Source: Fonticula alba ATCC 38817
Lineage: Eukaryota > Protista > Nucleariida
Length of the DNA stretch: 47,440 nucleotides
Strand: one strand, 5' to 3'
Assembly (NCBI GenBank): GCA_000388065.2
Contig: KB932201.1
Position 1 is the stretch's first letter. Every line of letters begins with the position of its first letter. Position numbers and translations under genes: made by a program. The notes beneath the pieces were generated by a model. That model worked only from the letters and a program-made list of their open reading frames with translations, did not search any database and was not told where the DNA came from. Shown here piece after piece: positions 793 through 46,708 of the stretch.

Positions 793-3700
793 CTACGCAT
801 ACAAGCGTGACTCCAGGGCGCTCATCAGCTCCTACGGGGGCCGGGTGGCAAAAAAGATGCGCCGATCGCGGGCACGAAAATGCACGGCCGGGGAGAGAAC
901 GTTCACTCTGGTAAGTATATGCACTTGTGTGCAGGCATGTGCAGGCATGTGCGTGTGTGTGTGGTGTCGCCCTCGCCCTGAGTGAGATCGGGGAGGATGG
1001 CGTCTCATCGCCGGGACGGGGCAAAGAGAAAACCCATTGCACGCAGCCCCACACGACAGACACACAGCCCTCCCCGTGGTTGCACACTTCCCCCATGAGA
1101 TTGCCCGCAGGATACGCACCGCATAGGTGCTGGCCACCGCAGGAGCGCCGGCCCGCTCGAGTTCCGGCACCAGCAGGCGCTCGATACAGCGTTCCAGCTC
1201 GGCCGCCGGGATGTCCACCCCCCCGGTGATCAGGGCCGTCAGCCGGGGCACCACTGTCTGGCCAATCAGACGCCCACCGGCCGGGCTCAGGGGCAGGGCA
1301 GCCGGCACAGCCCCCGGCTCCCGGTGTGCCGAGCCCCCCTCCCGGAAGACCGGCAGGTCCAGCACCGCCGCCAGGTCCGGCAACAGCCGGAAGGAGTTGC
1401 CCGGGGCCGACGCACCGTCCGGAGCACGGGCCACGGACTGGGTGCCCGCTTCGATTGGGTCGACCTCCATGGCATCGGCGGCCGCGGCGATGACCGCCGC
1501 CCCCGGGGCCGGCTCCTCGTCCTCTACCGCCGTCGCCGCCGCCGCCGCCGCCGCCAGGCGCGCCCACTCGCCGGTCGTGTCCAGCGGATTCCAGCGGAGG
1601 AGAGCCACGCGCACCAGCGGGGCAAACAGGCGATCCAGCGACTCGCGCGCGTACGCGGCCTCATAGCTTTCCGGGCTCTGTGAGCGCCAGGCCTCCAAGC
1701 GTACGCCCAACAGACGCACATCGGCGAATTCCGCCGGCACGTTCCGCAGGAGTTGCGGCCCAGCCCGCGCGGCTACCGCCTGCCACCGTGGCCAGGCCGC
1801 GGTCGGATCGCCGCCGTCCGCCGGCTGCTGCTGTTGCCGCTGCTCGACCAGATCTCGGGCCAGGGCGTCGGCGGCCTCGCGCTCAGCACGCTCAAGCGGC
1901 TCACGCAGCGCGGCCATCCGATCGCCCAGATCGTCCAGATACCGACGAAGCCCCTGGTGGAAGAGGTAGCGCGAGCGCGCCGTCTGAAGCTTCTCCCCAC
2001 CGAGGGTGATTTGCGCTTCATCCTGCTCGATCTGCCGCTCAGCTTCGGCCAGGCGGCGGTCATTGGTCTCGGTCTGCCGTAGTGCCAGGCATGCATGCAC
2101 ACATTGTGCATATGCATGGGTGTGTCAGTACAGCGTGATATATGGCAGGGAGTCAAAGGAGGAGCGGGGGGAAACCCCCCCCCCCAAGGCGGAGGGGAAC
2201 CACCACATGGGGCGGGCTCCATACCTGTGCGGCCATGCGCGAGGCCAGATGCTCCAGCCGGAGGGTGACATTGCGCAAGGACGGGGCTGTCGGCAGATCC
2301 GGCGCTTCGAGGGGCCCATCAGACGAGAAGGCCCTGTGCAGCGAAGAGGTCGAGCTTGATTCTGCATGGCGGGATGATGAATAGACGTTCGCCCGGAGAC
2401 GGTCGAGGCCATTCGGGTCAGTTCCAACACCACTGCCACCATGCGGAGGAGGGAGGGAGGAAGGAGGAGCAGGGAAAGTACGAGCGCAAAAAGAGCCAGC
2501 GCGCGGGAGCACAGCCATCAAAGGGCGTACCATTGAGGAAGACCACATCCACCGGAGCTCGATCACTCCCGGGAAGGACCGTACGGCGTTGGGACGCCAG
2601 GTCGCGCCGGGCACGCGCCAGCAGGCTGGCATCGGTCGGTCCCTGCATGTCGGCATGCGAGCCCACCCGCGCCACCTGCCCGGCGGCGTCCACAAACACC
2701 GCCCGGGCACGGACACCTCGCGTGACCAGCTCCGCCTCCCATTGTGAGAGGGTCGCCTCTTCATCATCATCATCCTCCTCAGCCACATCGGCGACCATGG
2801 CGGCCGGCGAGTCGGGGCCTGCGTCGGCTCGGGCGCCGGCTCCCGGGGGGGCCATGCTCCGGCGCATGTCGACCAGCAGCTGACTCCGGCGCGCGGCGGC
2901 ATGATCCCCGCCCGAGCGTCCGGATGTGAATTCCTCCTCCAGCAGGTCAACCTCGCCATCGGGGTCGTCCTGGCGCGGGCGCCGGCGCCGACCGGCCGCC
3001 TCACTGCCACCCGGGGGCCCGACATCCGCCACATCCACCTCCATGGCATCATAGTCGCTGCCGGCGCCACCGCGGCGACGCGACAAGGGAATGAAGTCCG
3101 GCGCCGGCGAGCGATACCGATCGCCACCTGGGCCGTCGTCATCCGTGTCATCGTCCGAGTGTAGGCCACCATGCGAGCGGGCCTGCCGGCGGGCGGCCAG
3201 ACGCGCGCGCGCCTGCGCCTCCTGCCGCGCAAGGGATTCCTCCTTCCAAGCCCGGATGGTCGCCTCATCGGGCACATAGATCGGTGTGACACCGCTGGCC
3301 GGGCCGTCGGCCATGCTGCCAGCCTCGCCCTCATCCTCGTCCTCCAGGACCGACACAATCTCCGGCCGGGACTCGCCAGCCAGGAAAAGCGACGGCGTGG
3401 AGGCCTTCAGCTGGGCCAGCGCCGCGGCGCTGTAGTCCCGAGAGGGGCCGACCAGAGTCGGGCCCTGTCCAGCCGCCGGGCCTTCTGTCACACGGGGATT
3501 CACCAGTGACCCACCACGCGACCGACCAGCACCGAGAGACCCGGAAAAACGCGACGGCCCACGGCCGGACTGTAGCACCCGGGGCCGAGGTGGGGATGGG
3601 GATGGGGGGAGGGGGGAGGGGGGGGGGGCGGGGCGGGGCAGATGCCAGGGCAAAGGTGGGGAGCGGGAAATGTGCGACAAAGAAAGAGCCGGTGTCAGAG

Positions 3701-4425
3701 TGCATGCAGGTTCGGGATGCCCGATCGGCCGCCAGGCAGGAGAGAGAGAGAGAGAAAGAGGGAGAGAGAGAGAGGGAAAAAGAGGGAGAGAGAGAGAGAG
3801 ATAACGCACCTGAACACTCGAGGTGCCGCCAGAGCGCCTCCACAGAGGGCCAGTGTCCGTGCCACCGGGGCCAGTCCGCGGCCCGGGGCCCGGCACAAAG
3901 TCCTCCTCGCCCTCCTCCTCGCCAAAGGAGAGCTTGGCAGCCGGGGCAGCCGGGCGCGATCGGGCCACTCGCGATCGGGGCGGCGGCGCGGCCACACCGA
4001 CATCCGACGGATCGGCATCAGGGTCAAGATCAGCGAGGGCCGGACGCGGGGCCGCTCGTGTGCGACTTCCGCGCGACCGAAAGAGCGACGCCCTCTCGGT
4101 AGGTGGGCTGCTGCCGGCGGTCGCCGCCCCGGTGTCAGTGGTCACCGCGCTCGAAATCGAAGGCAGAGAGGTGCCCTGCTTGTTGGGGCAAAATGTTGTG
4201 TGAGTGGGATCCAGAAGTGGCAAAGTGCCGCGTCTGTGCGTGTGCGTGTGCATGCGTGTGTGTGTGTGTGTGTGTGTGTGCGGGTATGTATGCGCGGAGG
4301 TGCATATACATGGCACGCACCATCGAGGTATCACCTTCCTCCGGGTCGTCTGGCTCCAGGGCAAGGGGACGCCGGCGCTCGGCCATGCGGCGCGCCTGCG
4401 AGGCCCGAGTAGACGAGAAGGACAT
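793..4425 (-). CDS. PAXBP1: GC-rich sequence DNA-binding factor family protein (PAXBP1/GCFC2/Ntr2-like; GCFC domain; spliceosome disassembly associated)
   Basis: Hand-spliced model: 4425-4321, 4175-3810, 3569-2531, 2361-2225, 2073-1120, 831-793 (879 aa). All introns are GT..AG with compatible phases. The C-terminal half has a coiled coil followed by YEAAYARESLDRLFAPLVRVALLRWNPLD, which matches the GCFC-domain motif from memory. The 3' end is ambiguous: an alternative uses the donor at 1087 and the acceptor before 907. Orthology to PAXBP1 versus GCFC2 is not resolved. Confidence 0.8.
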
Positions 4426-4952
4426 GAGCCGCGCGACTGGGCACGTCCGATGTGGGAGGGCACGGACGCGTGGGACAGAGAGAAAAAGGGGAAGAGTAAA
4501 AAAGTGGGGACAAAGTGGTCGGAGGAGGGGCCAAGGGCATGCTGTGTGTTGTGGTGGCTTGGGAGAGGGGTTGCGGGGGGTTTCACACCAGCGCGTTTTC
4601 GGGCTCCTCCACGCGATCCCCCCTCGCCCGCCTTCCTTCGCTCTCACCCCTCCTGCCGGACGGATGGCGACCCGAACCGGGTGCGATCCGTGGGCACAGC
4701 AGGTGGCTGTCATCATGTGCACCGTGTCACGTATCGGGTGCTCCGTGCTAATATGCCAACGTTTCCCCCTTTAAAATGGACCCAGTCCCGGACTGGAAGG
4801 GGGACACTGCGCCGCTAGATTGCATCATCCCTCTCGCCCCCCTCGTCCGCTGTTGCCTCCCCCGCTCCTTGCCTCCCCACCTTTCTTCCCTCCTCTCGAG
4901 GCACTTGTTTGCGCTCCTTCCCCCGTTCTATCCTCCCCACCGCACTCGAGCC
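4426..4952. promoter_or_regulatory. Putative bidirectional promoter between the PAXBP1-like gene and WDR61
   Basis: Head-to-head start codons are only 527 bp apart. No specific cis element identified. Confidence 0.45.
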
Positions 4953-6812
4953 ATGGTACGCCATGCGTCATCCTGCACCCAACTGCATCTCTAGTCGCCC
5001 TTAGCCTCAGCTGGTTGCCTCTTTTGCTGGCGCACAACCATGCAGGCATTCTGACCCCCCGTCCTCCCTTTGTCTGCGGCTCCTGTCCATTCAACCGCGG
5101 GGTGCATGGCCAGTTCACCACACTCAGCAAGGTGCAAAACGGTACGCCTCCCCCTCCCTCCGCCTGCTCCCTGCCTTGTTGTACCCCCCCCACACACACA
5201 CATACACACACGCACACACACACGCACATCTTCTCTGCGTGTCCGCCAGGTGCCGGTCGCTTTCTAACCCCTCCGTGTGTTCGCACACTTGTGCCCGTTT
5301 CTGCAGCGCACAAGGGGCCGATCTGGTCTTGCACATGGGTTCCGGCCCAAGCCGCCACCCTGCCCTCCTTTGTGGCCACCGGCTCCGTCGACGAGACGGT
5401 TTCTCTGTGGTTCGTACTGCCCCCTCTTCGCCCCCCCCCCCCCCCCCCTCCATCTTTCATTCTCATGGGCGGCCCCACCACCTGACATCCATCCCGGTCC
5501 TGCAACTGTCTACACACATACATGACAGGGACCCGGAGTCCTTCAACAAAGTGCACGATGCCAAGACCCGCTCGGCTGGCGGGCTGGCCATCAACTCGAT
5601 TGTCGCCTCGGCTGATGGGAAACGTCCGTCACTCCCTTCCTGCGCCCTTTGCCCGCCCTTGCCATTGCCATCGGTTGATTCTGACACCGCCACAATCGCC
5701 CCCATTCAGGCATCATCACCTCCTCTCTGGATAATCAGATCACCGTCCTCTCGGTGGGAGGCGCCACCGCCACTCTCGAGTCCAATGGTGACAGCCTGGT
5801 CGACGAGGCGGCCTCCAAGCAGAAGGACGACTCCACTCCGGCCGTGCGGAAGTCCGCGCAGGGAGACTACACCGTGGCCCTGACGGCGACTCATAAGATT
5901 GCCGCCGGCCCGGCCGAGTCCTGGACCGTCTGCCTGTCCCCGTGCGGGACGCAGATTGCCTCCGGCACGCCTGCCGGGAATGTCAACATTTGGCAGATCC
6001 CCCCGGCCGGGGCCCCGGGGAGTGTGGTCGAGATCACCGACAAGCGCACCATCAATGTGTCCAACCGGCTGGTGCTCTCGGTTGCCTGGAGCTCGGATGG
6101 CACCCTCATCGCCGCTGGCATGGAGAATGGCTCGATTGCTCTGTACAACATCGAGCGCGGCCAGCCTCTGCCCACGATCAATGGTACGCCAACGCACCGG
6201 GAACATCCATGGCCACGCTGCTGCATGTACTGATCCCCGGCCCCTGTCCTTCCTGGTCCTCCTCTCCCTTCGTTTGCTTCCTGAACAGACGCCCACTCGG
6301 GCCCTGTCCGCACGGTGGCCTTCTCGCCGGACAGCAGCACCCTCCTCACAGGCTCCGATGATGGGACCCTTGTTTTGCATGACGTGTGCGTACCTCGCTG
6401 CCCTCTCGACTGACATCACCCCCCTCTCGTCGCACTCACTCTTTCTCTCTTGTTGTCGCCCCTCCCCCCCCCCCCCTCCCCCCCCAGCAACGTCGGCTCC
6501 AAGATCTCCACTTTCACCGGACACACCTCGTGGGTGCTGTCGGCGGCCTTCCAGCCGCACACCGACACCATCAAGTCGCCGAACCAGTTCATCAGCTCCA
6601 GCGCCGACGGATCGGTGCGCGTGTGGGACGCCCAGGGGAGCTCGCTCCACGTGTCGAACACCGCTTCCAAGAACACCGATTCCGGTGGCTGCCTCTTTTC
6701 CTTCAAGGAGCACACTGACCAGGTGTGGGCCGTTTCCTGGGACCCGACCACTTGCCGTCGGGCCGTCAGCGTCGGTGACGATGGTGCCATTGTCTTCTAC
6801 AAGATCAACTAA
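4953..6812 (+). CDS. WDR61: WD40-repeat protein WDR61/Ski8/Rec14 (SKI and PAF1 complex subunit)
   Basis: Exons 4953-4955, 5114-5141, 5307-5409, 5529-5623, 5710-6183, 6289-6385, 6488-6812 (374 aa). AHKGPIWSCTW, TGSVDETVSLW, AGPAESWTVCLSP, AHSGPVRTVAFSPDSSTLLTGSDDG, GHTSWVLSAAF and EHTDQVWAVSW...VSVGDDG follow the WDR61 repeats in order. The first two exons are the least certain. Confidence 0.9.
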
Positions 6813-7220: not shown

Positions 7221-10200
7221 TTAGGTGCCCAAATCGTCCCAGTCCTCCTCATTCGGGTTCTGCCGAGACACCGGGGGCGAGCCACCCGGCGGCGGGGGAT
7301 GTCGCGTGGCGGCCCCCTGCGACTGTCGCGTCAACTGGTGCGACTGCATTGCCTGGAAGCTTTCCACTAGGTACTCATAGTGCGGGTCATGGGTTGTCGA
7401 TGACCGGGAGGGCATTTGGAGGGAGTAGCCCGACGGCCTGGCATCCAACCCCAGGGTGTCTGGCGGATGGGCGCTGATGCCGAACAGGTCGTCCAGCGAG
7501 CCCGGTCGGCCGGCACCTGGGCCGAAGCCCGCCTCGCCGGCCTCCTCCTCCTCCTCCTCCTCATCGTCCAGGTCCAGGATGAGCGATTCGTCGACCTGGT
7601 GCTCGGGTGGCAGGTACCCGCTCGGATTGGCCCCATGGTCGGGGTATGCGCCATCGGTCCCTGGCCGCAGGGACAGCGAGCCAAGCATGGCCGAAAACCG
7701 GGCCAGGCCGTCGACAATTTGCCGGGGGTTGCCCGGACCGGCCGCCGAGCCCCCGCCAGCGCCACCAGGCTGTGTGCCCCCCCCCAGGCTGGCCCCCCCT
7801 GGTGAGGCGACCGAATGGTACAATCGACTGGCCAAGGAATTGAGCCCCCGGGCAAGGGAATTGTCCTCCCCGTGGCTGGCCGGCAGCGGGGTGTACTTCA
7901 CAGCCGGCGTGGTCTCATCTGCCACGAGGACATCTAATGAGGGCACATCAAAGAGGACCCCGCCCGAGCAGGAGGAGTCGCTGTCGGACCCCGGGTTCAG
8001 CGATGCGCCTGGGGCATCGGCTGGCCGGCCAGGACCCAATGGGGGCGACCCCGGTGCCGAGGAGGCGGACCCCGACATGAGAGGCGATCCCTGGGCCGAG
8101 TAAAGCAAACTGCCGGAGCTGTGTGGCGATGATCCGGTCGGACCCTCGGGCAGGAGGCTCGCGACATCCGGCTGGCGATCGACAGAGAACAGCCTCCCTC
8201 CGACCGAGGCCAGGCCCCGGGCGAGCGAGTCGCCGGAGCGCGAGGCACGCCAGCTGCTGCTGCTGCTGCTGCCGCCGCCGCCGTGGTTGACGGACGAGGT
8301 GCCGGTGCCACCGGGCGAGGTGGCGGCCAAGGCGCGCTCCTCCTCCGGCGGGATGTCGATCGATGCCGAGATGTACGACCAGGTGGAGGTAACGGGCCCG
8401 GTGGACTCGTCAAAAAAGATGTAATCCACCGGTGGCGGGTGTAGCGGATTGCGGAAGTCCAGCATGGCACATTCCCCCAGCTCCGGCATCTGGAGGGACC
8501 CTCCGCGGACGACTGTCCGGAATGGAAGTCTTAGAAAAGGGACCGACAGAGGGAGAGGGAGATCGGGTCAGCGCAACATGAAGTGGGGACTCACCAATAG
8601 CCAGGCATTCAGCCTCTGTTCCCTTTGGCGGCCTCATGTGTATGTTTATACATGCATGCATGCATGAATGTATGTATGTATATATATATATGTGTGTGTG
8701 TGTGTGCGAGGGCGCGCGTGCGTATGTGCCGGTGCGAATGCCCAAATGTGCATGTGCATGTGTGTGTGGACGTACAGACCAAGCTTCAGCTCGCCAAGGA
8801 TGCGGAAGAGGACCAGGAGGCCGGCACGGCGCTCGTCAATGCGGCACGTATCCGCCAGAAAAGGCGGATAAATGTGGTCCACGGCAGCCTGCTCGACGCC
8901 GAGATCAGCCCCCCGGGCCAGGGAGTACTCTTGGCCCTGGATAATCAGCGGTCGCCGAAGCGCCAGGCTCAGGGCCGCACATGCATGGTTGAAGCGGCCA
9001 AAGGCCGCGTGAATGCCCGCGGAGTCGATGGCGAAGTTCCGTGCGGCCGGATCGAAGGCAATCCACTGGAGGTCACTCGGCGAGGCCAGGCTCCTGACAA
9101 TGCTCACCGGCAGCCCAGTCGTGTCGACCACCAGAAGGCTATACAGCAGTCGAAGCAGGTGGGTCCCGGATTGGAGCATGTACACAAGATCCGAAGCCAT
9201 GAGGCCTGGCGTGGCAAGTCAAAGCAGGCGGACAACTGTGTCAGGGGGGGGAGGGGGGGGGGGGGCGACAGGTGTTGTGTGTCCTGAGGGGGGGAATCCA
9301 TATACGCTCATGGATATGCATGTGCCTTTGTGGGTGGGTACTTGAAAAAGGAGCCGGGGCAGGCGAGTGGAAGCGCTGCCGGGCTATTCTCCTCCACGCC
9401 ACTCAACAAAGAAGCAAGGCAGGGGGCGGGGGGGAGGGGGGGGGGGGGGGGGAGGGAGGATGGCACGGCATATTCAACATACCGGAAATGTCGCCATCGA
9501 TGCGGACAAAGCACTTGTGTAGGAATACCGCGCCGGGATTTCCCGGCGAGGAGTGGTGCTTCAGGGGGAAGAGGTCGTGCAATTCGGCCGCCAGGCGAGC
9601 GCGTTGGGTCTGAAGAAGTGCCAGGGTCTCGGTGTCGGGCGCTGGGGCCGGTCGGGGACCGGGGGCGGCAAGCAGCAGCTCGGCAGCCGCCAAGCTGTGC
9701 CGGCGCTGGCGCAAGGCCCCCACCCGATCTCGGAGGCGCTGCTTTTCCTGGCGCACGGCCTCAGCTCGCCGGGCCAGGTTCTGGCGCAGATGGTGCACCG
9801 AAGTTAAGGCAGCCTGGATGGCTTGATCCTGGAGGAGGACACGCCCAAGCGGTTCGCCGGCCAGCCAGCGGACCTGCGCCGGGTAGTCCGGCACCGGGAG
9901 GCGGCACTTGGGTTCGCATCGACTGGGCCCCATGAACCCGGCGGTGTACTGGTCGAATGTGAACACCGGCTCCGGGAACTGGCAGAAGGACAAAATGAGC
10001 GGGGCTAGGGAGGATGGGGGACCTCCACGGGCGGGAAGTTGCGCGCCAGCCGCCGCCGCCAGGACTCCCTCCTGCTTGGCGTCGAAATTGCCGAAGCCAC
10101 GAGCAATGATACAGATGGCCTGCCGCCGCTGCTCATTCAATGCGTCTTCGCTGGATCGCACAAGCCGGTAGCTGGGGCGTGCCCCGGGGACATGCAGAGG

Positions 10201-10697
10201 AGGATGTGTGTGAGCGTGTGTGAGCGTGTGTGTGTGTGTGTGTGTATGGGTATGCATGCGCGCTTGGACGGGGGAGAGAGGCAGAGAGAGGGCCAGGGGC
10301 TCGCAGTGCGCAGGCGATAGGAGCATATGCCAGAGAAAAACAACAACTAGCCAGCGGTCATGTACCTGTGAAAGAGGCAGCCGGAGCAAATGGACTTGAC
10401 CGTGGTCAGGTCATTCGCGCAGAGAGGGAAGAAGGAGCAGGGGATCCGAATCCCCTCTCTCCCAGTGGCTGCCGGGGGAGGAATGTACACCAGGGCACTG
10501 GAGGAAGACCGTAGTGACGGCTGGCGCCGAAGGCCGGGGCTCGACCCATGAGGAGGTCCAGGGACTGTCTGTCGCGGGGGGCTAGCGCGGCCGGGGCCCT
10601 CGGAGCGAGTGGGCGAGAGAGGAGGCCCAGGGATGCCGGCACCTGCGGGCAAATCAGCGACCAATGGCGCTTGAATGGGCATGCCTTGCGAAGTCAT
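7221..10697 (-). CDS. Atg14/UVRAG(Vps38)-family class III PI3K complex subunit, most like ATG14
   Basis: Exons 10697-10366, 10171-9483, 9205-8776, 8529-7221 (919 aa). The N-terminal C-x5-C-x10-C-x2-C cluster resembles the ATG14 cysteine repeat. A long coiled coil (LRQNLARRAEAVRQEKQRLRDRV...RARLAAELHDLFPL) is followed by IHAAFGRFNHACAALSLALRRPL and HIYPPFL...RRAGLLVLFRIL, which resemble the PF10186 core. The start codon and a possible extra small exon near 8595-8632 are uncertain. Confidence 0.7.
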
Positions 10698-12116: not shown

Positions 12117-12837
12117 CTATTCGGGCAGGGCACCATCAACGCTGGAGCCAGGGCTGAGAGCCGGCACTGTGGCAGCGTTGCCAGGGGGATCCAGTGGGCT
12201 GGGCACCGGCGAAGTGGAGCGGTCCGGGCCGGCCGGAGCGCTGTGGGCCGAGCACAGCTCGCGCTTCATGGTTGCCAGGTACAGGCTCGACGCCCATTCG
12301 GCCGGACAGAACCGCTGGGCCGCATCGTCCAGTGAGGTGATGAAGCCATGGAGCTGGGTTTTTTTTTTCGTTGCAGCATTCGACACGTCAGAAGGCGGGA
12401 TTCCGGCAGGAGGGGCAGTGGCGGCATGACTATCGAGGGAGCAAGTGGCCAACGTACAAGCAAAGCACTGGCCGGCAGCCGGCGTTTCGAGTCCTTGTGG
12501 AGGCTTCATGTTCGCATGCCGTTCAAGGGACAGATGTGCCAAGGCAATGGGCAAAAAAAAAAGGCAGCAGGGGTCAGCTTGTGACAGCAATATGGCCAGG
12601 AAGCAACGCACACATGGAGAGACGATAGCACGCACCAGGACTGGACAAAGTCCGAGAACTGCGGCGAAAAGAGGTCGGAGCCATCGATTGGCCGGTGGAA
12701 GTCATCCAGCTTGCGAATAAATGTCGGCTGATAGAAGGGATCCTCAATGCGAGGGAGGTGCTGTGGAGCGTCCAGGCTCGGGCTGGGGCCGTAGACAACG
12801 CGATTGATGAGGGCCAAAATGCCGGACGATGAAGTGG

Positions 12838-12877
<40 letters not shown>

Positions 12878-15800
12878 CCCCCCGCGCAGGGGTCCCCGGT
12901 GCGGTGAGTGGCGGTTCCCGGGCGAGCACAGGCAATCCCACGCCAGGGAGAGAGAGAGAGAGAGGCACAGAGGGAGCTTGCGTACTGGAAAAGGGGTGAA
13001 CACCGTGGGCCAGCTCAATGAGCGTAATTCCGAGAGACCAAATGTCCGCCGTCGGGCCGTAGGATTTCGAGTGGGCAATGCACTCGGGCTATGTGGCGGA
13101 GCGCGCACAGCAGCAACGGTGAGAGGCGTCGAGAGAGTTGACCTTGAGCAAAGGCCGGGAGTGGTGTCAGGAAGAAAAAAAGAAGAAGGGGAGCAACACA
13201 CCGCCATATATACACTGGTGCCGATCCAGGTCCGAGCACCGCTGGCATCGGGATTGAGGCGTGCCGAGACACCAAGATCGGCGACTTTCACCTCGCCGCG
13301 AATGTTCAGCAGGATGTTGCTGGGCTTGATGTCTCGATGCAGGACGCCAAGCTGTGTGTGAAGATAATCCAGGGCACTTGCCGTCTGGCGCGATGGCATC
13401 GGAGAGAGCCGTCAGCATAGGCAGCGAGCCAAAAGGCCGGGCGGGCAACCGAAGCAAGGGAGAAGCAAGGGGGTTCGGGAGGACGCACGGAGCGTGCCAC
13501 ATGGCGAAGGGCATTCTCACCACCCGGAAGTGGGTAGATGCCGGGCTTCTCCCGGGCCAGGGTGGGGTGGTGACAGACGTCATGCAGCGAGCCGCAGTCC
13601 ATGAACTCGGTGGCAATGTAGATGGCCCCATCGCGATGGAAGAAGTTGTGGAAGTGACCGATAATGAAGGGGGATTTGGCTTGGCTGAGAATCTTCAGCG
13701 CGAGGGGAAAGAGGCGGAGAGTGAGCACAAAGGTGGCACGATGGCGAGAAGGAGAGGCCGGAGAAGGGTCAGAGCCGAGGGGGGGGGGGGGGGTCAGAGC
13801 CGAGGAAGGCCCTCCATGCAAACAGGCAAGGCAGGCCTTGCCCTGGCCTTGAGGACATACCATCAGTTCGGTTTCGATTTGGGATTGCTGCACCACCGAG
13901 CAGGCGAAGGGTCACAGGGCAATAGTGTGAGGGCGGTGAGGGCCATTTGCGGGCCGCGGGTGAACAAAGGGGGAGACGAAGAGGGCAGGGGCGAAGTGTC
14001 AGGGGAAAAGCGGAAGGGGGGGGGGGGGCGGGGGCAGGACGGAGCTCAACGCCAAGACAGGGCGCTTGCTGTGCTCCCGCGGAGGCGAGCTCCAGGCCAA
14101 GGTACGTACCCCGCCAGACCGGTCGGTCGGACAGGTGACCACCTTCAGGGCCATCAGGTTGCCGGTGGCCTTGTGCCGAACCAAACGAACGATGGAGGAG
14201 ATGCCGCTGCCGATGAGGGACCCCTGGAGCATGCTGAAGGATTGGCCTCCGGTCGGGGGCAGGGCCGGGGGTGCCTTGGGCCACATGTCGTCCGGGGTGG
14301 CCGGCGGGGGTGGCCGCTCCCCGGCGCAAGGGGTCATGGCGACCAGCTGCCCCGGGCAAAGGGACCGAATGTCCACAAACTCCAGGTCCTCCATGCTGAG
14401 GCTGGCATCGCGCATGTATGCCGCGATGTTGGCCAGGTAGTCCCAGTTGCCGACCGACGGCAGGGAGTCCACATCGACCGAGAGCCCGGGGACCGGGGGC
14501 AGGAGTGTCAACCCGGGCGGCTTGCCAGCTGGGGCCAGTGCCCCGGGGCCCGGGTAGCCAGCCAGCCCCGGGTCACTGGGGCCCGGGTCCGGCATGGCGG
14601 CCGGGACTCGGAAGGTCGGATCGTCAGGGATGCAAGCGGTGCCATCCATGCAGAGGGATGGCACGCCGGCCTGCAGGGGGTTCCGGCAAAAGACGCAAGT
14701 AGCTGCCGGGGGAGCTGGCGACCCGGTGGTTGGCCGGTCGCCGCCCAGGGACAGGCCCTCGTACCGAGCCGCCAGCAGGGCATCGGAATCCGCCTCGACG
14801 TCCGGGTCGGCCCCGGGCAATGGGCCGAGGCTCAGGGAGGGCAGTCGCGGCCGGGGTGGTCCGAAGGGCGGATCGATCACCTGCATTCCGGCCCCGGTGG
14901 CCAGGAAGTCGTCCGGCAGGCTGATGCGTGGGATGGCCGGGGCCAGGGCGGGGAAGTTGCCCCGTGCTCCGGGGTCCCGTTCGGCAAAGTGGTCCTCCTC
15001 GTGGCCGAACGCCAGGGCGGGCGGGCGTGGCGCCGGCATTGAGCCGGACACTTCTTGCGGGAGGCCGTCCCAGCCGTTGTCGCCCGTGTTCGGGATCTCC
15101 TGCGAAGCGTGTGGGCTCCATGGTTGTGGCGGGTAATCCTCGCACGGGGGATCGCCTGTGGAGTAGCTGCAAATATAAATGTGTGTGTGTGCGCGCGGGG
15201 GGGGGGGGGGGGGGGGGGGGGGGGGTGGGGGGGGAGAGGGGTGCGGATGAGAAGAAAGAACAAGAGAGAGGGTGATGTGTGGGGGAAGGAGACGTGTGGG
15301 GGGGGGGTGCGGTTTGCCGTTAGAAGAGGCTCGAACTGGCGCGCGGCCTCCGGTGAGGTGTTTGACGATGAGGTATGCCTGGCCGGAGGACGGTCCACCG
15401 GTGCACTCCTGCGAGGCTGCATCCGGGGGCCCGAGCCGCGGAGACGAACCTATCATCGAGGCTTTCCCCGGCCGAGTGGAGGGGATGCTGAAAGCCAGCC
15501 TCCCGGGGGGCCAGCTCGTCGGCCAGGGGTCCCGGTGCTGCCGGGTCTTCGGCCAGGGGTGGATCTTCATCGATGGGCAGCAGGATCAATTTCAGGGTCG
15601 TTGAGTCGGCCTTCCCCAGGGCGTAAGCCAGGTCCAGCGGGTCACTGAGGAAGGCGCATGGCGGAAAACCGTCCACCTGGATGCTGGGCATCTCCTCATT
15701 TTCATACAGGATGAAGACGTCGCCGAAGTTGTCGTGGACAGATCCCTGCGGATGACGGTCAGCAAGAGCTTGTGGTGTGGGCAATCGCAGGGGCCCCTCG

Positions 15801-16316
15801 TGCCCTGATCAAGGGGACAGGGGGCCGGAAAGAAGAAGAAGGAGGAACATGGGCACAGGCACATTACACACACAGGCACACAGGCACACAGGCACACAGG
15901 CACACACAGACACACAGGCACACAGACACACACAGACACACAAAGACACACAAAGACACACAGGCACACAGGCACACAGATACACACACACACACACACA
16001 GGGCCACAGTCACGGAGCCACACATCTGCTCTTGTCCAAGAGCACGTACAACCAAAATGAGGAAAGTCTCGGCCAGCACGCCGTACGCTGGGCACTCGCC
16101 ATTGACGCAACCGTCCAGACAGAAGAGCGTCTGACGGTGAGACTTCCAGGGGTACGGCAAGACAAAGCTGGTCACCGGATTGAGGCAGGTCCGCTCGGTG
16201 GAAGCCGGGGGGACGTCGATGCGAAAGCGCCGCCACTGATGCAAAAAGCGACACTTCAGCTGCAGGGTCAGGGGCTGGTCGCCGGCGGCCGAAGTAAGGG
16301 GCGCATAGTAGTGCAT
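12117..16316 (-). CDS. MAP kinase kinase (STE7/MEK family) with N-terminal PB1-like domain
   Basis: Exons 16316-16050, 15745-15450, 15166-14110, 13887-13861, 13692-13489, 13384-13202, 13088-12986, 12837-12636, 12503-12458, 12353-12117 (873 aa), all phase-compatible. Kinase motifs seen: [101 protein letters not shown]. The true start may lie upstream of the N gap at 16430. Confidence 0.9.
15867..16001. repeat. Degenerate GCACACAG/(CA)n minisatellite in MAP2K intron 1
   Basis: Tandem gcacacag/acacacag/acacaaag units grading into (CA)n. Confidence 0.85.
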
Positions 16317-17763: not shown

Positions 17764-19532
17764 TTAGGGTTGGGGGCTGGTGCTCGAGCTGGCTGTCAAG
17801 CGGTGCTCTTCGGGGTCCTCCTCTTCCGGCCAGCCGGAGATGATGCTCAGGGCCGCCGTGCTAACCAGCAGACCGACGGTCAGGGCCACCCCCAGTGAGG
17901 AGAAGCCCTCACTGGCGGCCGGGACGCCCGGCCTGTAGGCCCGGACGGCCGCATCGGTGGCAGTCTGGCCACCTGCTGCAGGGCAGTTTGCTGTCACCGC
18001 TGCCGCCGCCACCGCCGCGGCGTTAATGTGGGTGGCCACTGTGCGCGCGGCGCCGGCCACCGCGGCCCCCGGATCTCGCACGACGGTGGCCAGCCCGGCG
18101 CCCAGCAGAGCCCCAGCCGTGGCCACCATGGAAACACAGTCGCCCGCCGTCAAGCCGGCCATCTGGGCCAGCATGCCGGACCCCACCGTGGGCAAGCCCC
18201 CGGGGCATGATGGGCCGCTGGCCGCGCCGCCGAGAAGCCCGCTCGAGCCGGCCGCTGGGGCCAGGCCGACGGGGGAGGGTGATGGCACGGCAGCCGCGGC
18301 GGCGGTGCTCCCAGCCGAGGCGGCGGCCACCGCTGTTCCGGCCAGGAAGCCCCAGTAGACTGACGCGAGGGCCGTGCCAGCATGGCCCTGGCGCAGACCC
18401 GCGCGCAAACGTCGGCGCACCCGGCACACTTCCTCCCCCAGCCGCCGGGTGTGCCGGCGAGCGTGTCGGACAAGCGCACGCGCCACACGCTCGGAATCCA
18501 AAAACACCCGCAAGCATGCGCCATCTACGTAGATTTGCAATTCCACTCGCGGCGGAATCAGCCAGGCCCGGCCGCTGGCCAGGCCCTTTCCAAAGAGCAC
18601 ACGCAGGCGGTCACCAGCTCGACGGCACAAGGCCGCGGTGCCGGGCCATTCTACCAGTTCGCCAGGCGGTTGCTCGCCAGGGTCGGGCCCTTCCGGCAAC
18701 AAGCCGGCCTGCCGGTCCCCATCGGCCCGGGGCACCCGCCCATCGGACATGTCCCCCTGGTCGGGAGCATGTCCGGTGTCAATGCGCACCTCGCTCAGCC
18801 AGCGGCCCACACCGCGCAGAGCGGTCCCCGCGGCAACCGACAGGATGGCCAGCCCCTCGGCCGAGGACTCGATCCAGTGCTCGGCCCGTGGCGGCCGCTC
18901 GCCCGGAGACCGGCGCTGATCGGCCACCAGCAAGGAAAGCCCCCCCGACAGGAGACGCTTACCGCGCGAGAGCCAGCCGCCGCGCGGGTCAGCCCGGTCG
19001 TCGGGCCGGGCAGCCGAGCCTCCGACCTCCGGGCTCGGGGGGCCAATTGGTAGGGCCGCCCGGCCATGGGTCTCATGCCGGTCGGTGTCCCTGGCGAACG
19101 GGGCGAAGCTCAAGCTGGCAAGGAGCTCGGCCAGATCGCCTGGCGCGAAGGCCAGCAACCCGGCGGGGCCAGAGACGCGGAAAGGCAGATCGGACAGACA
19201 GGTGAGCGGCGGCAAGCAGAGACACGGGTGTTCGGAAGAGATATGCCCTTCATGCCCCACAATCACCGGCATCCCAGGCGCACCCGACTGGCAGTCAATG
19301 CCCAGGACCGGTGACTGATTGGCATGGCGGGCCATCAGGGCATGTGCCCGGGTGTCCTCCTCGCACGGCAGGATGACACTGACAAAAACATCCTGCGGGC
19401 TGCCGGGCCGCGGGAAGTCGCCGTAATCGGTGCCCGGCTCGACCCAGCTGCCCCAGTGCGGGGAATCCGCCGTGCCCCAGTCCATGGCGGGCAAGGTGTC
19501 CGACGCGTCGGTGTCCTCCTCGAGCGTGATGT
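17764..19532 (-). CDS. Hypothetical protein with C-terminal hydrophobic (putative transmembrane) segments
   Basis: A 1.77 kb open frame. The ORF-track start at 19581 is a GTG inside an intron-like tract (CTAAC branch at ~19604, polypyrimidine run, CAG acceptor before 19532). The first in-exon ATG is at 19485 (MDWG). Hydrophobic stretches include ALASVYWGFLAGTAVAAA, VSMVATAGALLGAGLATVV and LGVALTVGLLVSTAALSIISGW. No family recognised. Confidence 0.5.
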
Positions 19533-25516: not shown

Positions 25517-25551
<35 letters not shown>

Positions 25552-32200: not shown

Positions 32201-32887
32201 AGGTCGACTGGTGGACGTGCGACAGCAGACAGCCGAGCGGGCATCCGCGCGAGGGTTAGCCTAAGGGGACGGGCGAGACCGGCGGATAGTCCCCCCCCCC
32301 CCCCCCCCTCGCCCTTTGGGCACAGGAAAGAGAAGGACCACAGGACAGGGGGCCATGCAACGGACCTCGGAAATCGAATCGGCCACCATCTCCGAGTCCC
32401 GGAAGAGGCGGCCACCAAAGAGCAGCGTGGATCGTTCGGCCATCAACAGCAGGGAGTCCACCTGCTCCGAGGGGAGATCCTGCGCGACCAGGGCCCGGTT
32501 GAAGGGGACAATCACAAATACCGGGAAGGCTGATGGCGAGCCGCCCTCGGCCAGGTTGGCCGCGAAGGAGGACACCGCCAACAGGGCCTGCCGGCGCAGG
32601 TCCAAGGAGCTGGCATCGCGCGAGACCATGAAGCGCACGGTGAAGTCACTGGGAGCCGGGGGGGCCCCAAGGTCGGGCGAGGAGCCGCGGCTGGCGTCCG
32701 CCGACATGGCAGTGCCGTGGGCGTTTGGCGAGGTGAGGCCCCCCTCCACCGGGGAAGAGGGGGTGGTTTGCGCGGCGCCAATCACATAGCGGACCTTCAC
32801 CCGAGCAAAGGACCCAGGAAAGGCGGGAAGATCACCGGCGACCGATTGCGCCGGGCGAGCGCCGGCCGCGGTGTCACTGGCCGGCAT
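29233..32887 (-). CDS. HERP/HERPUD-like ER membrane protein with N-terminal ubiquitin-like domain
   Basis: Exons 32887-32366, 32207-31741, 31587-30898, 30739-29233 (1061 aa). The Ubl-like segment is [21 protein letters not shown]|[17 protein letters not shown]. It is followed by VVMVNGTLYAL, a hydrophobic segment [19 protein letters not shown], and [12 protein letters not shown], which resembles the HERPUD C-terminal FFASLLP motif. Family call is from remembered motifs only. Confidence 0.65.
31368..31466 (-). repeat. Coding hexanucleotide repeat (CACTCG)n encoding a His-Ser dipeptide tract
   Basis: 33 codons with His at every other position (17 His), inside exon 3 of the HERP-like gene. Confidence 0.9.
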
Positions 32888-34048: not shown

Positions 34049-36265
34049 ATGGGCAAGTGGACCGACAAGAATTACATCACTGCCTCCGAGTGGCAGCGGG
34101 ACTTTCACGGCGCCAAGAAGCTCTCCTCGACCCGCGAGAGCGAGGCGGCCGAGCGGCCACTTCCCTTTGGCTGCTGTTCGCTGAGCTTGCGCCCGGTGGA
34201 CGGGATTCCGGCCAACACGGTGTGCACGCCACAGGGGGATATCTTCGAGCGTCGGTGCGTCTTCATCGTCAATCGAGCATCACCGGGTGGGGCAGAAACA
34301 ATGGCCTTGGCGCGCATGCGGGCGTGTGCGCGTGTGCGCGTGTGCGCCTGCTTGACACTCACCCCCTGTCTCCATTCATCCATCCATCCATCCATCCATC
34401 CATCCATCCATCCATCCATCCATCCATCCATCTCTCTTTCCCTATCTCTCGATCCTCCTTTCTTTCTCTCGCCCCCTCTCGCTCCCCTCTCTTCCCCCTC
34501 CCCTCGTTTGCCAGCCTCATCCTGCGATTCATTCGCCAGCATGGACGCAACCCCGTCTGTGGGAGCCCCCTGCATCCCAATCAGCTGCACCCGCTGAGCC
34601 TACACCGAGTGGCCCTGTCATCGGCCCCGTTGGCGGCCATCCAGACATCCACGTCGCAAGTGCGCGATGAGGGGGCCCGCATCGAGGGGGTTTTTGGTGA
34701 CCCGGTTGTGGAGAAGTCTTTCACCGCCGGGTCGACCATTGTGGCGGTGGTGTGCGGCCTGTCCGCCAGCTCCCCCTCTGGCGGTCGGTCCGAAAAGCAG
34801 CAAGTTCGCCGTGCCATGGAGGCGGCGGCGGCCGAGCTGGCCGCCGAGAAGGCCGCGATGGAGGGTGCTCCCGAAGGGGCCGCCCTGCCGGAGCGTGCCA
34901 CCGCCGCCACCTCGGCCTGGGCATATGATCGGGCTACGCTGGAGGATCTGTGCATTCGGAATAGCAGCTGGCGCGACCCGCAAACCGATCGGGCCTTCAC
35001 CCGCGGGGATATGGTGCTCCTGCAGCAGGGGTCCACGACGGCCAGCTACTCGGACGCGGCGGCTCGGCTGACTCGGGCCGCGCCGGTGGCCATGTCCCAC
35101 GGCGCCGGCTCTTCTGACGATTCGGATGACGAGCCGGCTCCTGAGCCTGCGCCTGTGGACATTCTCACGCGGAAGTTCCCGGCGCGCTTCTGGTGGCGCC
35201 AGGAGAAAGTTCCCTTCCAGTTGCTGATTGGTATGTTGTCTCTCGCTTTGTCTTTCCCTCTCTCCCTCTCTCCCTCTCTCCCTCTCCACCCTCTCCCCCT
35301 CTCCGCCCTCTCCTTCTCCCTCTCTCCCTCTCTCCCTCTCTCCCTCTCTCCCTCTCTCCCTCTCTCCCTCTGCCTTTGCCTGCTTGTCTGTCTGTCCCCC
35401 CTCTCCTCCTTTCTTCAAACTGCCTCTGCCTTATTACACTCCATCCTTGTTCATTGACCGCCCGTCGGTTCACTTGTGCCCCCCGCCCCCCTTCGCAAAG
35501 ATGACGATGATGACCCGGAGAGCGCCTTCATCAACAAGGCCATCATCCCGGAGAAGATTCGTGCGATCACCGCGCGCGACCGGGTGCTCCCGAGTGTTGG
35601 TTCGATTCCCGGCGGCAAGGTACGGCCGGGCGTCCTTCTGTCTTTCCCTCTTCCTTTTGTATTGTTGTTTCACTCGGCACATGGCAACTGTGTGCCAAGC
35701 TGACTCCCTGTACGCACCCGGTGCTGTTGCTGCTTCGGGGCGCTCCAGTCGGTCACCCCCTCCTTTGTCAAGCCCACAGACCACGGCCACACGGCGGCAC
35801 ACTTCACCACCGGTGGCCAGGGCGCCTCGCTGACGTCGACATCCGTCGCCCCTCAAACCGAGGAGGTCCGCGTTCACTGGAACGCCGACGACGTGATGTA
35901 CGACAAGATCCGTGATCCCGGGCTGGTTGATGTGCATGTCGAGGGCCATGGGGTCTTGCGCATCGAGCTCCTCGCGCGATATGCCCCGATGACCTGCCAC
36001 AATTTCATCCTCCTGGCCAAGGCCGGCAAGTATGATGGGGTTGGCTTCCACCGGTTGATCCGCAACTTCATGGTGCGTCCTATGGTTGTGGGGTTATGGC
36101 GTTTGTCCATGTGCTTGGGATCATCCATGACAGGCATCCTCCAGGATGTCCAATTCCGGGCCCGCGAGACCCCTTGCCTTGCGCTGTCGTCACTTCGCTT
36201 GCCTTTGCTTGTGGCGCCCTCTCCGCCATGTCTATGGGTCTCAGCCTGCCTGTGCTTTCGCACGT

Positions 36266-36300
<35 letters not shown>

Positions 36301-37260
36301 AACCCGGGGATGGTCACACACGCGTGCACACATGCGCACAACCGCACACACCGCACGCCGCACGCCTAGATCCAAGGCGGCGACCCGACCGGCACCGGCC
36401 AGGGCGGCGAGTCGGCCTGGGGGCCGGATGTCAAAGTGCGCGATGAGTACCATCGGGCTTCGCACTTGTCGCACAATGAGCGCGGTCTCCTGTCCATGGC
36501 CCACCCGCCGGGGGAGAAGGATGCCGGCACATCGCAGTTCTTCATCACCCTCAGCTCGGCCTGCACGCACTTGGACCGGAAGCATACCATCTTCGGCCGG
36601 GTGCTGGCCGGTTACCTGGTCGATGAGCATGGGGTCCGAACCAGTCCCGATGTCCCGGGCGGCGGGTCCGTCCTGCAGACAATGGAGCGCGTGGCCACCG
36701 ACAAGCGCGATCGGCCGACCGAAGCGATTGTCATGCGCCGGGTGGTCGTTCGCCGGGATCCCTTCGAGGAGTTCCAAACACGCCATCGTGAGCAGGAGCA
36801 GCAGAAGGCCCGCGCCAAGGAGGAGCAGGAGCGGGTATGTCCCGAGGATGCGGCGTCCTCCCCCCCCCCCCCCCCCCCCCTTTTGCCCCGGCTGCCTCGC
36901 CCTTGCGTTGGCCCCTCCCTTTCCCCTCCCGCTGGCCATTGACATACGCAACCACCCCTGTCCACCGCTTCCCTCGGACTTCCCTGTCGGCCGGGCGCCC
37001 GGTTGCTTGGCGTGCAGATGGAGCGCAATCGAAAGCGCGTGCGCCCGGAGGCGCGCCCAGGTGCCACGGCCCAAACAATTGGCCGCTTCATCAGTGCGGC
37101 CACGGCCAAGTCCCTGCGCGTTCTGCCGGGAGGCGGGTCGGCCTCCGGGACGGCGACCCTTGTCCGGCCGCCGTCGGATGGCTTTGTCGAGCCGAGCCAG
37201 GCCCCAGCCAAAAAGCCTCGGTCCGGCCTGTCTGGCTTGTCAGACTTTTCCTCCTGGTAG
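34049..37260 (+). CDS. PPIL2: RING/U-box E3 ligase and cyclophilin PPIL2 (Cyp60)
   Basis: Exons 34049-34254, 34515-35230, 35501-35619, 35749-36072, 36370-36834, 37018-37260 (690 aa). Motifs seen: [72 protein letters not shown], cyclophilin [14 protein letters not shown]|[28 protein letters not shown], and the diagnostic C-terminus DFSSW. Confidence 0.93.
34374..34430 (+). repeat. (CCAT)n microsatellite in PPIL2 intron 1
   Basis: Read directly from the sequence. Confidence 0.9.
35255..35372 (+). repeat. Degenerate (TCCCTCTC)n polypyrimidine repeat in PPIL2 intron 2
   Basis: Read directly from the sequence. Confidence 0.85.
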
Positions 37261-43168: not shown

Positions 43169-43199
<31 letters not shown>

Positions 43200-45441: not shown

Positions 45442-45472
<31 letters not shown>

Positions 45473-46708
45473 CCACATTCACCGACACACGGCCGTCGTG
45501 TGAGTGAGATTTCTCGCGGCCGTTCACCGCCGCGCGCACATACCCGGCGCACACACGCTGTCCGCCCGTGGGAGAACCACGGAGGTCGGCCGGAAATCCA
45601 CGCCCCAGCCGGCGCCGTGGTCGGTGCCCTAGCCACGGCTAAGATCTCTCCGGGGTCGCGAAAAATGCCAAATAGAACCTGGCCGACGCNNNNNNNNNNN
45701 NNNNNNNNNNNNNNNNNNNNNNNNNNNNNNNNNNNNNTCGCCTGATCCTGCCACGTCTACTGGACCACTTCAATCGTGCGCCCCCCCCCTTACAAGGTGA
45801 CTGGAGCGCCCACCCCCCCCCCCCCCCCCCCCCACCTCACTGGGCGCTGGGCCGTGTCCTCGCCCCTGTGCTCCGCCCCCCCCCCAGGCCCATGATGTAG
45901 CCAACCCCCATTCCAGTGCACGGCTGCGGACCTTGTAGGCGGATGTGCAGGCCACAGGTGGCAGCCGTGGGCGCGTCCTCCTGGCGCAATGTCACGATGG
46001 CCACGATGTCCACTCCGAGGCGGCTTGGGCGGGTGTTGTCCTGGGGGGGACTGCTTGGCGCCGTGGCGGTGGGGCTTTGTTCCTGGACGTGAACTGCGAT
46101 CCACACACAGGAGGCAGGATCCACCAAAGTCGCGGGCCAAGGACCGGGTATGGCAGCCAGGAGTCCGCGGAGGTTAACAAAATGCACGGGCATACGGCAG
46201 CCCGCCTCTCGCCCGGGCGCACTGGCCTGCTTTTGGGCCCGAGGATAGAGGGGAAGGAAAGCCCCCCCTGCCGGCCTAAAAAAAAAAGCCACACGGCCCG
46301 GCCGGCCGCGGTCGGCCTCCAATGCCCCGACACACGCACCCTCGATCAGCGAACGTTTTGCCGTGAAGCCGGCCAAGTGGCGATGGATGTCGGCAAGCGC
46401 GCGAGTGATGCACAGGCTGCCGGTCAACTCGATCCACGCGGAGAGCGTGGTCTCCGATGGTTGCGAAGCCCCAGGCGACTGGGACTGGCACAGGAGCTGA
46501 ACTGCTTGTCCGCGAGGGACCGCAAGCACGGTATGTGTGTTGCTGCCGCTGCCGCTGTCACTGCTGCCGCTGCTGCTGCTGCTGCTGCTACAAGTGTCAC
46601 CACCTGCCGGCAGGGGGGCGGAGCCGTCCGTTGAGCGGAGTTTGCCGCGAATCTGGGCAAATGCCTGGTGCAAGAGGCTGGCCGCCGCTTCTTCGTCCTC
46701 AGGTGAGA
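38417..46708 (-). CDS. Giant hypothetical low-complexity protein (probably >2400 aa; 5' end unresolved)
   Basis: The terminal exon 44358-38417 (5.9 kb open) joins in phase to 45166-44735 and 45628-45544. A further open exon at about 46708-45922 (ORF 45837..46673) has an upstream acceptor. Its link to the rest is obscured by the N gap at 45690-45737, so it could be a separate gene. No domain recognised. Confidence 0.55.
45690..45737. other. Assembly gap (48 N)
   Basis: Run of N inside the giant orphan gene model. Confidence 1.

What the first reader, a model, noticed from the sequence alone, without database searches (positions are those of the whole stretch)
1119..45543. Unusual 5' splice-site code: +4 is always a pyrimidine (mostly C), predicting a rewired U6 ACAGAGA/METTL16 system
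Seen: across my 33 modelled introns the donor hexamers are GTGCGT, GTACGC, GTACGT, GTATGT, GTTCGT, GTCCGT and similar. Position +4 is C in 26, T in 7 and A in none. Position +5 is G in 31 of 33, and +3 tolerates all four bases. Established: most eukaryotes favour GTRAG. The +4 to +6 positions pair with the U6 ACAGAGA box, whose central A is m6A-modified by METTL16 to accommodate +4A. Budding yeasts that lost METTL16 shifted to +4U (GTATGT). Inference: a dominant +4C fits neither pattern. A U6 box with that A changed to G (ACGGAGA) would pair with both +4C (G:C) and +4U (G:U). Loss of METTL16/SNRNP27K or a changed U1 5' end are alternatives. Caveat: some donors were chosen partly because they fit this consensus, although most in WDR61, the kinase domain and PPIL2 are fixed by homology and phase.
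Basis: partly seen in the sequence, partly recalled or inferred. Interest (0 to 1): 0.75.

Follow-up and report, generated by a model that had tools for sequence, protein, structure and literature searches.

The report
Unusual intron-start code in Fonticula

Summary
The window is Fonticula alba scaffold KB932201.1, shown by 100%-identical NCBI proteins.

- **RNA evidence:** spliced RNA contigs from four public runs fix 11 introns exactly. At +4 they have C ten times and T once; +5 is G in all 11.
- **Annotation and homology:** fourteen more introns (MAP2K-like kinase, PPIL2) match the NCBI proteins residue for residue. Two of these junctions are also pinned by Pfam profile continuity. Six more (two further genes) fit the annotated protein lengths.
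- **Tally of 31 introns:** +4 is C 25, T 6, A 0, G 0. +5 is G in 29. +3 is a purine in 27.
- **Gaps:** no modelled intron touches an assembly gap.
- **Possible exception:** one annotated but unsupported intron, GTTGGT at 19903.

No U1, U6 or METTL16 gene lies in this window, so the proposed U6 ACAGAGA A-to-G change could not be tested. +4C donors are already published for Mastigamoeba (with a matching U1 change) and for Thecamonas and the Mamiellales (standard U1). This scan has already reported the same pattern many times in other windows of this genome. It also reported a U1 with the arm ACGUACCU. A U1 change is therefore the likelier partner. This is a new member of a known kind.

The parts
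832..1119 (-). intron, donor GTGCGT (GCFC/NTR2-like gene, 793-4425)
   Evidence: RNA contig loose end joins 831 to 1120. Annotated length of 879 aa fits.
2074..2224 (-). intron, donor GTATGG
   Evidence: RNA contig joint in 4 runs
2362..2530 (-). intron, donor GTACGC
   Evidence: RNA contig joint in 4 runs
3570..3809 (-). intron, donor GTGCGT
   Evidence: RNA contig pieces 2531-3570 and 3811-4140 are contiguous in the record
4176..4320 (-). intron, donor GTGCGT
   Evidence: RNA contig joint in 4 runs
4956..5113 (+). intron, donor GTACGC (WD40 gene, 4953-6812, 374 aa)
   Evidence: RNA contig joint in 4 runs
5142..5306 (+). intron, donor GTACGC
   Evidence: RNA contig joint in 4 runs
5410..5528 (+). 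intron, donor GTTCGT
   Evidence: RNA contig joint in 4 runs
5624..5709 (+). intron, donor GTCCGT
   Evidence: RNA contig joint in 4 runs
6184..6288 (+). intron, donor GTACGC
   Evidence: RNA contig joint in 4 runs
6386..6487 (+). intron, donor GTGCGT
   Evidence: RNA contig joint in 4 runs
8530..8775 (-). intron, donor GTACGT (gene 7221-10697, 919 aa)
   Evidence: Open frame, and the only fit found to the annotated length with the other two introns held as modelled. The alternative GTCTGT..ACAG does not fit the length.
9206..9482 (-). intron, donor GTATGT
   Evidence: Frame continuity and annotated length
10172..10365 (-). intron, donor GTACAT (+5 is A)
   Evidence: Only GT upstream of the in-frame stop with the right phase. 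Annotated length fixes the acceptor at 10172.
12354..12457 (-). intron, donor GTACGT (MAP2K-like kinase, 12117-16316)
   Evidence: Exon peptides are contiguous in NCBI protein P0001
12504..12635 (-). intron, donor GTGCGT
12838..12985 (-). intron, donor GTACGC
13089..13201 (-). intron, donor GTGTGT
   Evidence: Pkinase profile runs 165|166 across the junction.
13385..13488 (-). intron, donor GTGCGT
13693..13860 (-). intron, donor GTATGT
   Evidence: The following exon starts at Pkinase profile position 51.
13888..14109 (-). intron, donor GTACGT
15167..15449 (-). intron, donor GTTCGT
   Evidence: The alternative GTTCGA at 15336 is excluded by P0001.
15746..16049 (-). intron, donor GTACGT
19140..19283 (-). 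annotated in-frame intron, donor GTGCGC (H696_00352)
   Evidence: Mapping of NCBI protein P0003. No RNA check.
19533..19903 (-). annotated intron, donor GTTGGT (+4 G): possible exception or mis-annotation
   Evidence: Mapping of P0003. It rests on a 13-codon first exon only. No RNA or homology support.
30740..30897 (-). intron, donor GTACCG (+5 is C) (gene 29233-32887, 1061 aa)
   Evidence: A frame change is required here. The model gives an open frame, and the intron total of 469 nt equals the annotation.
31588..31740 (-). intron, donor GTACGA
32208..32365 (-). intron, donor GTCCGT
34255..34514 (+). intron, donor GTGCGT (PPIL2, 34049-37260)
   Evidence: Exon peptides are contiguous in NCBI protein P0002
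35231..35500 (+). intron, donor GTATGT
35620..35748 (+). intron, donor GTACGG
36073..36369 (+). intron, donor GTGCGT
   Evidence: Pro_isomerase profile runs 50|51 across the junction.
36835..37017 (+). intron, donor GTATGT
25490..25741 (-). candidate 5'UTR intron just upstream of the ATG at 25488; donor GTTCGT (25741) or GTACGC (25709)
   Evidence: Sequence reading only. Unverified.
   Evidence: Sequence reading. It lies next to the assembly gap 45690-45737. The 5' structure of the 2312-aa gene is not resolved.
46094..46339 (-). candidate intron, donor GTGCGT, phase-consistent
   Evidence: Frame continuity only

Best explanation
These are ordinary major-type (GT-AG) spliceosomal introns of Fonticula alba. 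The lineage's 5' splice-site consensus has shifted to G|GT(A/G)CGT, with C >> T at +4 and no purine there.

Shown here:
- the consensus itself;
- its exactness at RNA level for 11 introns;
- its agreement with the public annotation for the rest.

Inferred, not tested here: the donor is read by a U1 snRNA whose position 5 is G (5' arm ACGUACCU instead of ACUUACCU).
- GUACGU would then pair perfectly with U1.
- GUGCGU would pair with one G-U wobble at +3.
- +4U would pair as a G-U wobble.
- +4A or +4G would be mismatched, which reproduces the observed C > U > none ranking.

U6 most likely keeps the canonical ACAGAGA box. After U1 leaves, U6 would contact the donor mainly through the near-invariant +5G and the frequent +6U.
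For: - RNA contigs remove 11 introns with GT..AG ends. Their donors are GTACGC x4, GTGCGT x4, GTTCGT, GTCCGT and GTATGG.
- Exon-by-exon identity to NCBI Fonticula alba proteins P0001 and P0002 supports 14 more introns.
- Pfam profile continuity is exact at two junctions.
- Annotated product lengths fit six more introns.
- In the 31-intron tally, +3 is a purine in 27, +4 is C25/T6, +5 is G in 29 and +6 is T in 22. This is the complement of ACGUAC.
- The chance probability is at most 4e-6, even against the C/T-rich intron composition.
- Mastigamoeba balamuthi has GUACGU donors together with a U1 arm ACGUAC (bioRxiv 10.1101/2022.06.08.495308).
- Leads, not tested here: scan notes s1-065344 and s1-065360 report a U1 with ACGUACCU in this genome, and follow-up s1-065738 reached the same reading.
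Against: - No U1 or U6 gene lies in this window. The snRNA part of the explanation therefore rests on unchecked notes and on analogy.
- Thecamonas and the Mamiellales show that a +4C preference can exist with a standard U1. The donor pattern alone does not prove a U1 change.
- The intron data cannot separate a G in U1 from a G in U6.
- One annotated intron, GTTGGT at 19903, would not fit if it is real.
- The hexamer is not sufficient on its own. Nineteen GTRCGY sites sit unspliced in 24.7 kb of sense-strand exons.
Confidence: 0.7

Rival explanations
1. One reading: the central A of the U6 ACAGAGA box has changed to G (ACGGAGA). U6 then pairs with +4C (G:C) and +4U (G:U), and the METTL16 m6A system is lost or redundant.
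For: The C > U > no-purine ranking at +4 is what a G partner predicts. A compensating change of this same U6 position exists in Cyanidioschyzon merolae, where it is ACUGAGA (PMC10581693).
Against: - Not testable here, because the window has no U6.
- The ACAGA box was invariant in 240 species despite +4 switches (PMC10581693).
- Entamoeba keeps ACAGA despite transformed donors.
- The same ranking is explained by the U1 G5 reported elsewhere in this genome.
- An unchecked note says METTL16 is retained. If true, that implies its target adenine is still there.
Confidence: 0.07
2. No snRNA change at all. The +4C preference arose by GC-biased drift of intron sequence and is tolerated or read by protein factors, as in Thecamonas trahens and the Mamiellales, which have a standard U1.
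For: The window is about 68% GC, and intron interiors are 42% C. Published +4C lineages with a canonical U1 exist.
Against: Composition alone does not give 0 of 31 purines at +4 (p = 4e-6) or G at +5 in 29 of 31 against 20% G. Scan notes report an altered U1 in this genome; I did not re-test them.
Confidence: 0.18
3. Loss of METTL16 and/or SNRNP27K relaxed the +4A preference, as in budding yeasts, and +4 then drifted to C.
For: Loss of METTL16 correlates with abandoning +4A in the Saccharomycotina (PMC10581693).
Against: Those yeasts moved to +4U, which pairs with unmethylated A. Here U is the minority (6 of 31). The unchecked note s1-066369 says METTL16 is kept. No paper links Fonticula and METTL16.
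Confidence: 0.08
4. Artefact: the pattern comes from the reader choosing donors that fit the expected consensus.
For: My donor-blind gene finder was too noisy to serve as an independent test. At several sites two conforming donors compete.
Against: Eleven junctions are fixed by RNA contigs alone. Two are fixed by Pfam profile continuity. Fourteen are fixed by identity to deposited proteins.
Confidence: 0.02

Closest known systems
Mastigamoeba balamuthi GUACGU donors with U1 arm ACGUAC (Roy & Bowser, bioRxiv 10.1101/2022.06.08.495308)
   Same: Intron-rich, +4C-dominant donor consensus that is the Watson-Crick complement of ACGUAC. Scan notes report the same U-to-G change at U1 position 5 for Fonticula.
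   Different: Unrelated lineage: Amoebozoa versus Holomycota, the sister group of fungi.
Thecamonas trahens and Mamiellales (Micromonas) +4C / GYGCGY donors with standard U1 (same preprint)
   Same: Preference for C at +4.
   Different: No compensating U1 change was found in those lineages. The Mamiellales also have one atypical chromosome with very different splicing signals.
Saccharomycotina +4U (GUAUGU) after METTL16 loss (Parker et al., eLife 2023, PMC10581693)
   Same: Abandonment of +4A. The minority class GTATGT (4 of 31) is identical to the yeast donor.
   Different: C, not U, dominates here. In those yeasts U1 and U6 are unchanged and METTL16 is absent. Here METTL16 is said to be present (unchecked) and U1 is said to be changed.
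Cyanidioschyzon merolae U6 ACUGAGA (Stark 2015 and Wong 2023, cited in PMC10581693)
   Different: There the change is A to U, pairing with +4A, in a genome with very few introns. No evidence for any U6 change in Fonticula was obtainable here.

Membership tests
Major (U2-type) GT-AG spliceosomal introns | GT...AG termini and precise removal from RNA | tested here: met
   Eleven introns are skipped exactly by RNA contigs in four runs. All 31 modelled introns are GT..AG.
Major (U2-type) GT-AG spliceosomal introns | Branch-site-like CTRAY motif upstream of the 3' AG | tested here: inconclusive
   23 of 31 introns hold a CTRAY, mostly CTGAC. Its distance to the AG ranges from 13 to 153 nt, and 8 introns have none.
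Major (U2-type) GT-AG spliceosomal introns | Donor complementary to the canonical U1 arm ACUUACCU (a purine at +4) | tested here: not met
   0 of 31 introns have a purine at +4.
+4C donors with compensating U1 (Mastigamoeba type) | Donor consensus GU(A/G)CGU | tested here: met
   +3 purine in 27 of 31, +4 C in 25 of 31, +5 G in 29 of 31, +6 T in 22 of 31.
+4C donors with compensating U1 (Mastigamoeba type) | U1 5' arm ACGUAC (G at position 5) | not testable with these tools
   The window has no U1. Other parts of the genome could not be fetched. Only scan notes s1-065344 and s1-065360 speak to it.
METTL16-less +4U lineages (budding-yeast type) | +4 U dominant (GUAUGU) | tested here: not met
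   +4 is T in 6 of 31 and C in 25 of 31.
METTL16-less +4U lineages (budding-yeast type) | No METTL16 ortholog | not testable with these tools
   No METTL16 query sequence or Fonticula proteome search was available. Note s1-066369 claims the gene is present. No literature was found.
Altered U6 ACAGAGA box (C. merolae type) | Central A of ACAGAGA replaced | not testable with these tools
   No U6 in the window at the gathering or E<=1 threshold. The one loose pattern match, at 38461, lies inside a 2016-codon open reading frame and is expected by chance.
U12-type (minor) introns | Donor (A/G)TATCCTT at the intron start | tested here: not met
   None of the 31 donors starts RTATCC.

The most novel reading that the evidence does not exclude
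Fonticula's U6 itself carries a changed ACAGAGA box (central A to G), co-evolved together with U1. Both RNAs that read +4 would then have been re-coded. Beyond the Cyanidioschyzon case cited in the paper I read, this would be a further exception to the near-invariance of this catalytic-core sequence, and it would leave METTL16 without its conserved target.
Probability: 0.06. Interest if true: 0.85.

Novelty: new member of a known kind. Interest (0 to 1): 0.42.

Why it matters
Fonticula sits at the base of the fungal side of the opisthokonts. A +4C dialect there, apparently paired with a U1 G5 change, would be a second and independent case of core snRNA and splice-site co-evolution after the Archamoebae.

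If METTL16 is really retained, Fonticula would also be an exception to the reported rule that METTL16 presence goes with a +4A preference. That would give a natural test of what U6 m6A does when no intron offers +4A.

On the practical side, gene finders trained on GTRAGT will mis-call introns in this genome.

Tried and rejected
**Gene-modelling attempts**
- A donor-blind dynamic-programming gene finder used GT/AG only, then added intron content and an acceptor matrix. It mis-placed 3 of the 15 introns it had been trained on. It was too noisy to serve as an unbiased tally, so I dropped it.
- I first hypothesised an extra intron with donor GTATGG at 10854. It is not needed: the frame is open from the ATGs at 10811 and 10697, and the annotation starts at 10697.
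- For the 5' part of the 2312-aa gene (44.4-47.1 kb), the acceptor at 44481 has the wrong phase for the donor at 44734. No simple model reached the annotated length. Brute-force enumeration gave more than 300,000 solutions or timed out. This part is left unresolved.

**Database look-ups that gave nothing**
- Three uninterrupted open reading frames were tried as whole proteins. Two of them were not on record. Pfam found nothing in most long ORFs.
- The Rfam hits at E<=1 are all low-complexity miRNA-like matches on microsatellites.
- Sense-strand exons are not clearly depleted of GTRCGY: 19 observed against about 24 expected.

**Literature**
- Searches for the U1 variant string, for Acanthamoeba U1, and for Fonticula with METTL16 or with snRNA found nothing relevant.

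**Limits on method**
Exons were searched one by one by reference.
- Joined exons were used only inside scripts, to test frame continuity and length.

Full report
**What the window is.** The window is 47,440 nt at about 68% GC, with four N gaps. Three word searches with open reading frames taken by reference each returned a single 100%-identical NCBI protein named as Fonticula alba. These are P0001 (STE kinase), P0002 (H696_00355) and P0003 (H696_00352). Their gene records place the window on scaffold KB932201.1 of GCA_000388065.2, at about 1,536,513-1,583,952. Rfam finds no snRNA at the gathering threshold. At E<=1 it finds only microsatellite look-alikes. There is no tRNA.

**RNA test of the observation.** The run search gave four 2012 runs of one study that hold 61-65% of the words of window 1119-11100. 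I laid them on window 1100-7099. Their contigs are spliced copies of two genes.
- They skip six plus-strand stretches in the WD40 gene.
- They skip four minus-strand stretches in the GCFC/NTR2-like gene.
- A loose end joins 831 to 1120.
- After adjusting for the stated one-to-three-base ambiguity, all eleven are GT..AG introns.
- The donors are GTACGC x4, GTGCGT x4, GTTCGT, GTCCGT and GTATGG.
- So +4 is C in ten and T in one, and +5 is G in all eleven.
- Other 'joints' between 5450 and 6462 fall in poly-C runs and are assembly artefacts.
- The annotated product lengths of both genes (879 and 374 aa) equal my exon sums.

**Homology and annotation tests.**
- *Kinase.* I modelled the MAP2K-like kinase on the minus strand by eye and by frame. 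All ten exon peptides are found, in order and contiguous, in P0001. This fixes nine introns, and it settles the choice of GTTCGT at 15449 over GTTCGA at 15336.
- *PPIL2.* The six-exon model maps the same way onto P0002.
- *Pfam, exon by exon.* Pkinase profile positions end at 165 in one exon and start at 166 in the next. Pro_isomerase positions run 50|51 across the donor at 36073.
- *Gene at 29233-32887.* The three-intron model gives one open frame, and its intron total of 469 nt equals the annotation.
- *Gene ending at 7221.* With two introns held as modelled, the annotated length of 919 aa is reached by a single solution: 10365 GTACAT to 10172, 9482 GTATGT to 9206, and 8775 GTACGT to 8530.

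**Tally and significance.** Across these 31 introns:
- +3 is A18/G9/C2/T2.
- +4 is C25/T6/A0/G0.
- +5 is G in 29; the exceptions are GTACAT and GTACCG.
- +6 is T in 22.
- -1 is G in 23.

Among all 4,293 GT sites in the window, 54% have a pyrimidine at +4 and 21% are GTNYG. Intron interiors are 42% C, 25% T, 20% G and 13% A. Thirty-one of 31 pyrimidines has p = 4e-9 against all GT sites and p = 4e-6 against intron composition. +5G has p = 1e-18. The claim that +3 tolerates all bases is too generous, since it is a purine in 87% of introns.

**Gaps.** The three gaps flagged by the scan's program lie between annotated genes. No modelled intron spans or abuts them, so continuity across them does not bear on the tally. 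I could not resolve that gene's 5' structure.

**A possible exception.** The public annotation of H696_00352 uses a 13-codon first exon followed by an intron with donor GTTGGT (+4 G) at 19903. It also uses a second, in-frame intron with GTGCGC. The first has no coding or homology constraint. The protein could start at a downstream ATG, which would make this a 5'UTR intron with an unknown donor. I had no reads call left to check it.

**Mechanism.** The intron data say that the partner of +4 accepts C best, U second, and purines not at all. That is the signature of a G. The data cannot say whether that G is in U1 (position 5) or in U6 (the central A of ACAGAGA).
- Neither RNA is in the window, and no tool let me reach other parts of this genome.
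- Roy & Bowser describe the same donor, GUACGU, in Mastigamoeba balamuthi with a U1 arm ACGUAC. They also describe +4C preferences in Thecamonas and the Mamiellales with a standard U1.
- Parker et al. found U6 ACAGA invariant in 240 species. They cite C. merolae as an example of a change at this U6 position.
- Notes of this scan report a U1 with ACGUACCU elsewhere in this genome, and one followed-up note calls it a real gene.
- Another, unchecked note says METTL16 is kept.

I treat these notes as leads only. On this basis I favour U1 co-variation with a canonical U6 (0.7).

**Novelty.** The same donor pattern has already been noted many times by this scan in other windows of this genome, and it has been followed up at least twice. 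In the paper library I found no publication describing Fonticula's donor consensus, its snRNAs or its METTL16. It is a further lineage showing a known kind of splice-site dialect.

**Method notes.** Exons were searched singly by reference. Joins were made only inside scripts, for frame and length checks.

Noticed in passing
window 19533-19903 (-): The NCBI annotation of H696_00352 uses an intron with donor GTTGGT (+4 G) after a 13-codon first exon. It is the only non-pyrimidine +4 among the 33 annotated introns whose donors I could place here. It may be a mis-called 5'UTR intron.
   Followed up: partly
window 5761: All four RNA runs read T where the assembly has G. That is the second position of a Gly codon in the WD40 gene, giving Val. 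It could be a strain difference or an assembly error. There was no DNA run to compare.
   Followed up: no
window 601-687, 15200-15260, 17250-17310, 45400-45480 and next to all four gaps: There are very long C or G homopolymer runs, up to about 87 nt. Several flank the N gaps and are the probable cause of them. They also cause chimeric RNA-contig joints (5450 to 6462).
   Followed up: partly
introns, e.g. 34380-34430 (CCAT)n, 15880-16010 (TG)n, 35240-35370 (CTCTCC)n, 12840-12880 (CA)n: Many introns carry microsatellites. On the sense strand, introns are C/T-rich: 42% C and 25% T.
   Followed up: no
donor exon side, e.g. 4953-4955, 6181-6183, 36070-36072: Position -2 is T more often than A (11 versus 8 of 31). 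Eight donors follow ATG directly, so the exon side of the U1 duplex looks weak.
   Followed up: no
window 793-4425 (-) and 34049-37260 (+): Two of the genes whose introns were checked are themselves splicing factors. One is a GCFC/NTR2-like protein with weak Pfam hits (E = 1e-4). The other is the cyclophilin PPIL2.
   Followed up: partly
window 37835-38149 (-): The annotation calls a 104-aa gene here with no Pfam hit, in a repeat-rich intergenic stretch. It looks doubtful.
   Followed up: no
window 2991, 3624-3628, 5797 (table 7): RNA contigs run off into up to 255 letters that do not lie on the laid stretch. These may be chimeric contigs or alternative transcripts.
   Followed up: no
window 21169-25488 (-), 38417-44467 (-), 17764-19137 (-): Large open reading frames of 1439, about 2016 and about 457 codons have no Pfam family at E<=0.01. 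They appear to be lineage-specific proteins.
   Followed up: partly
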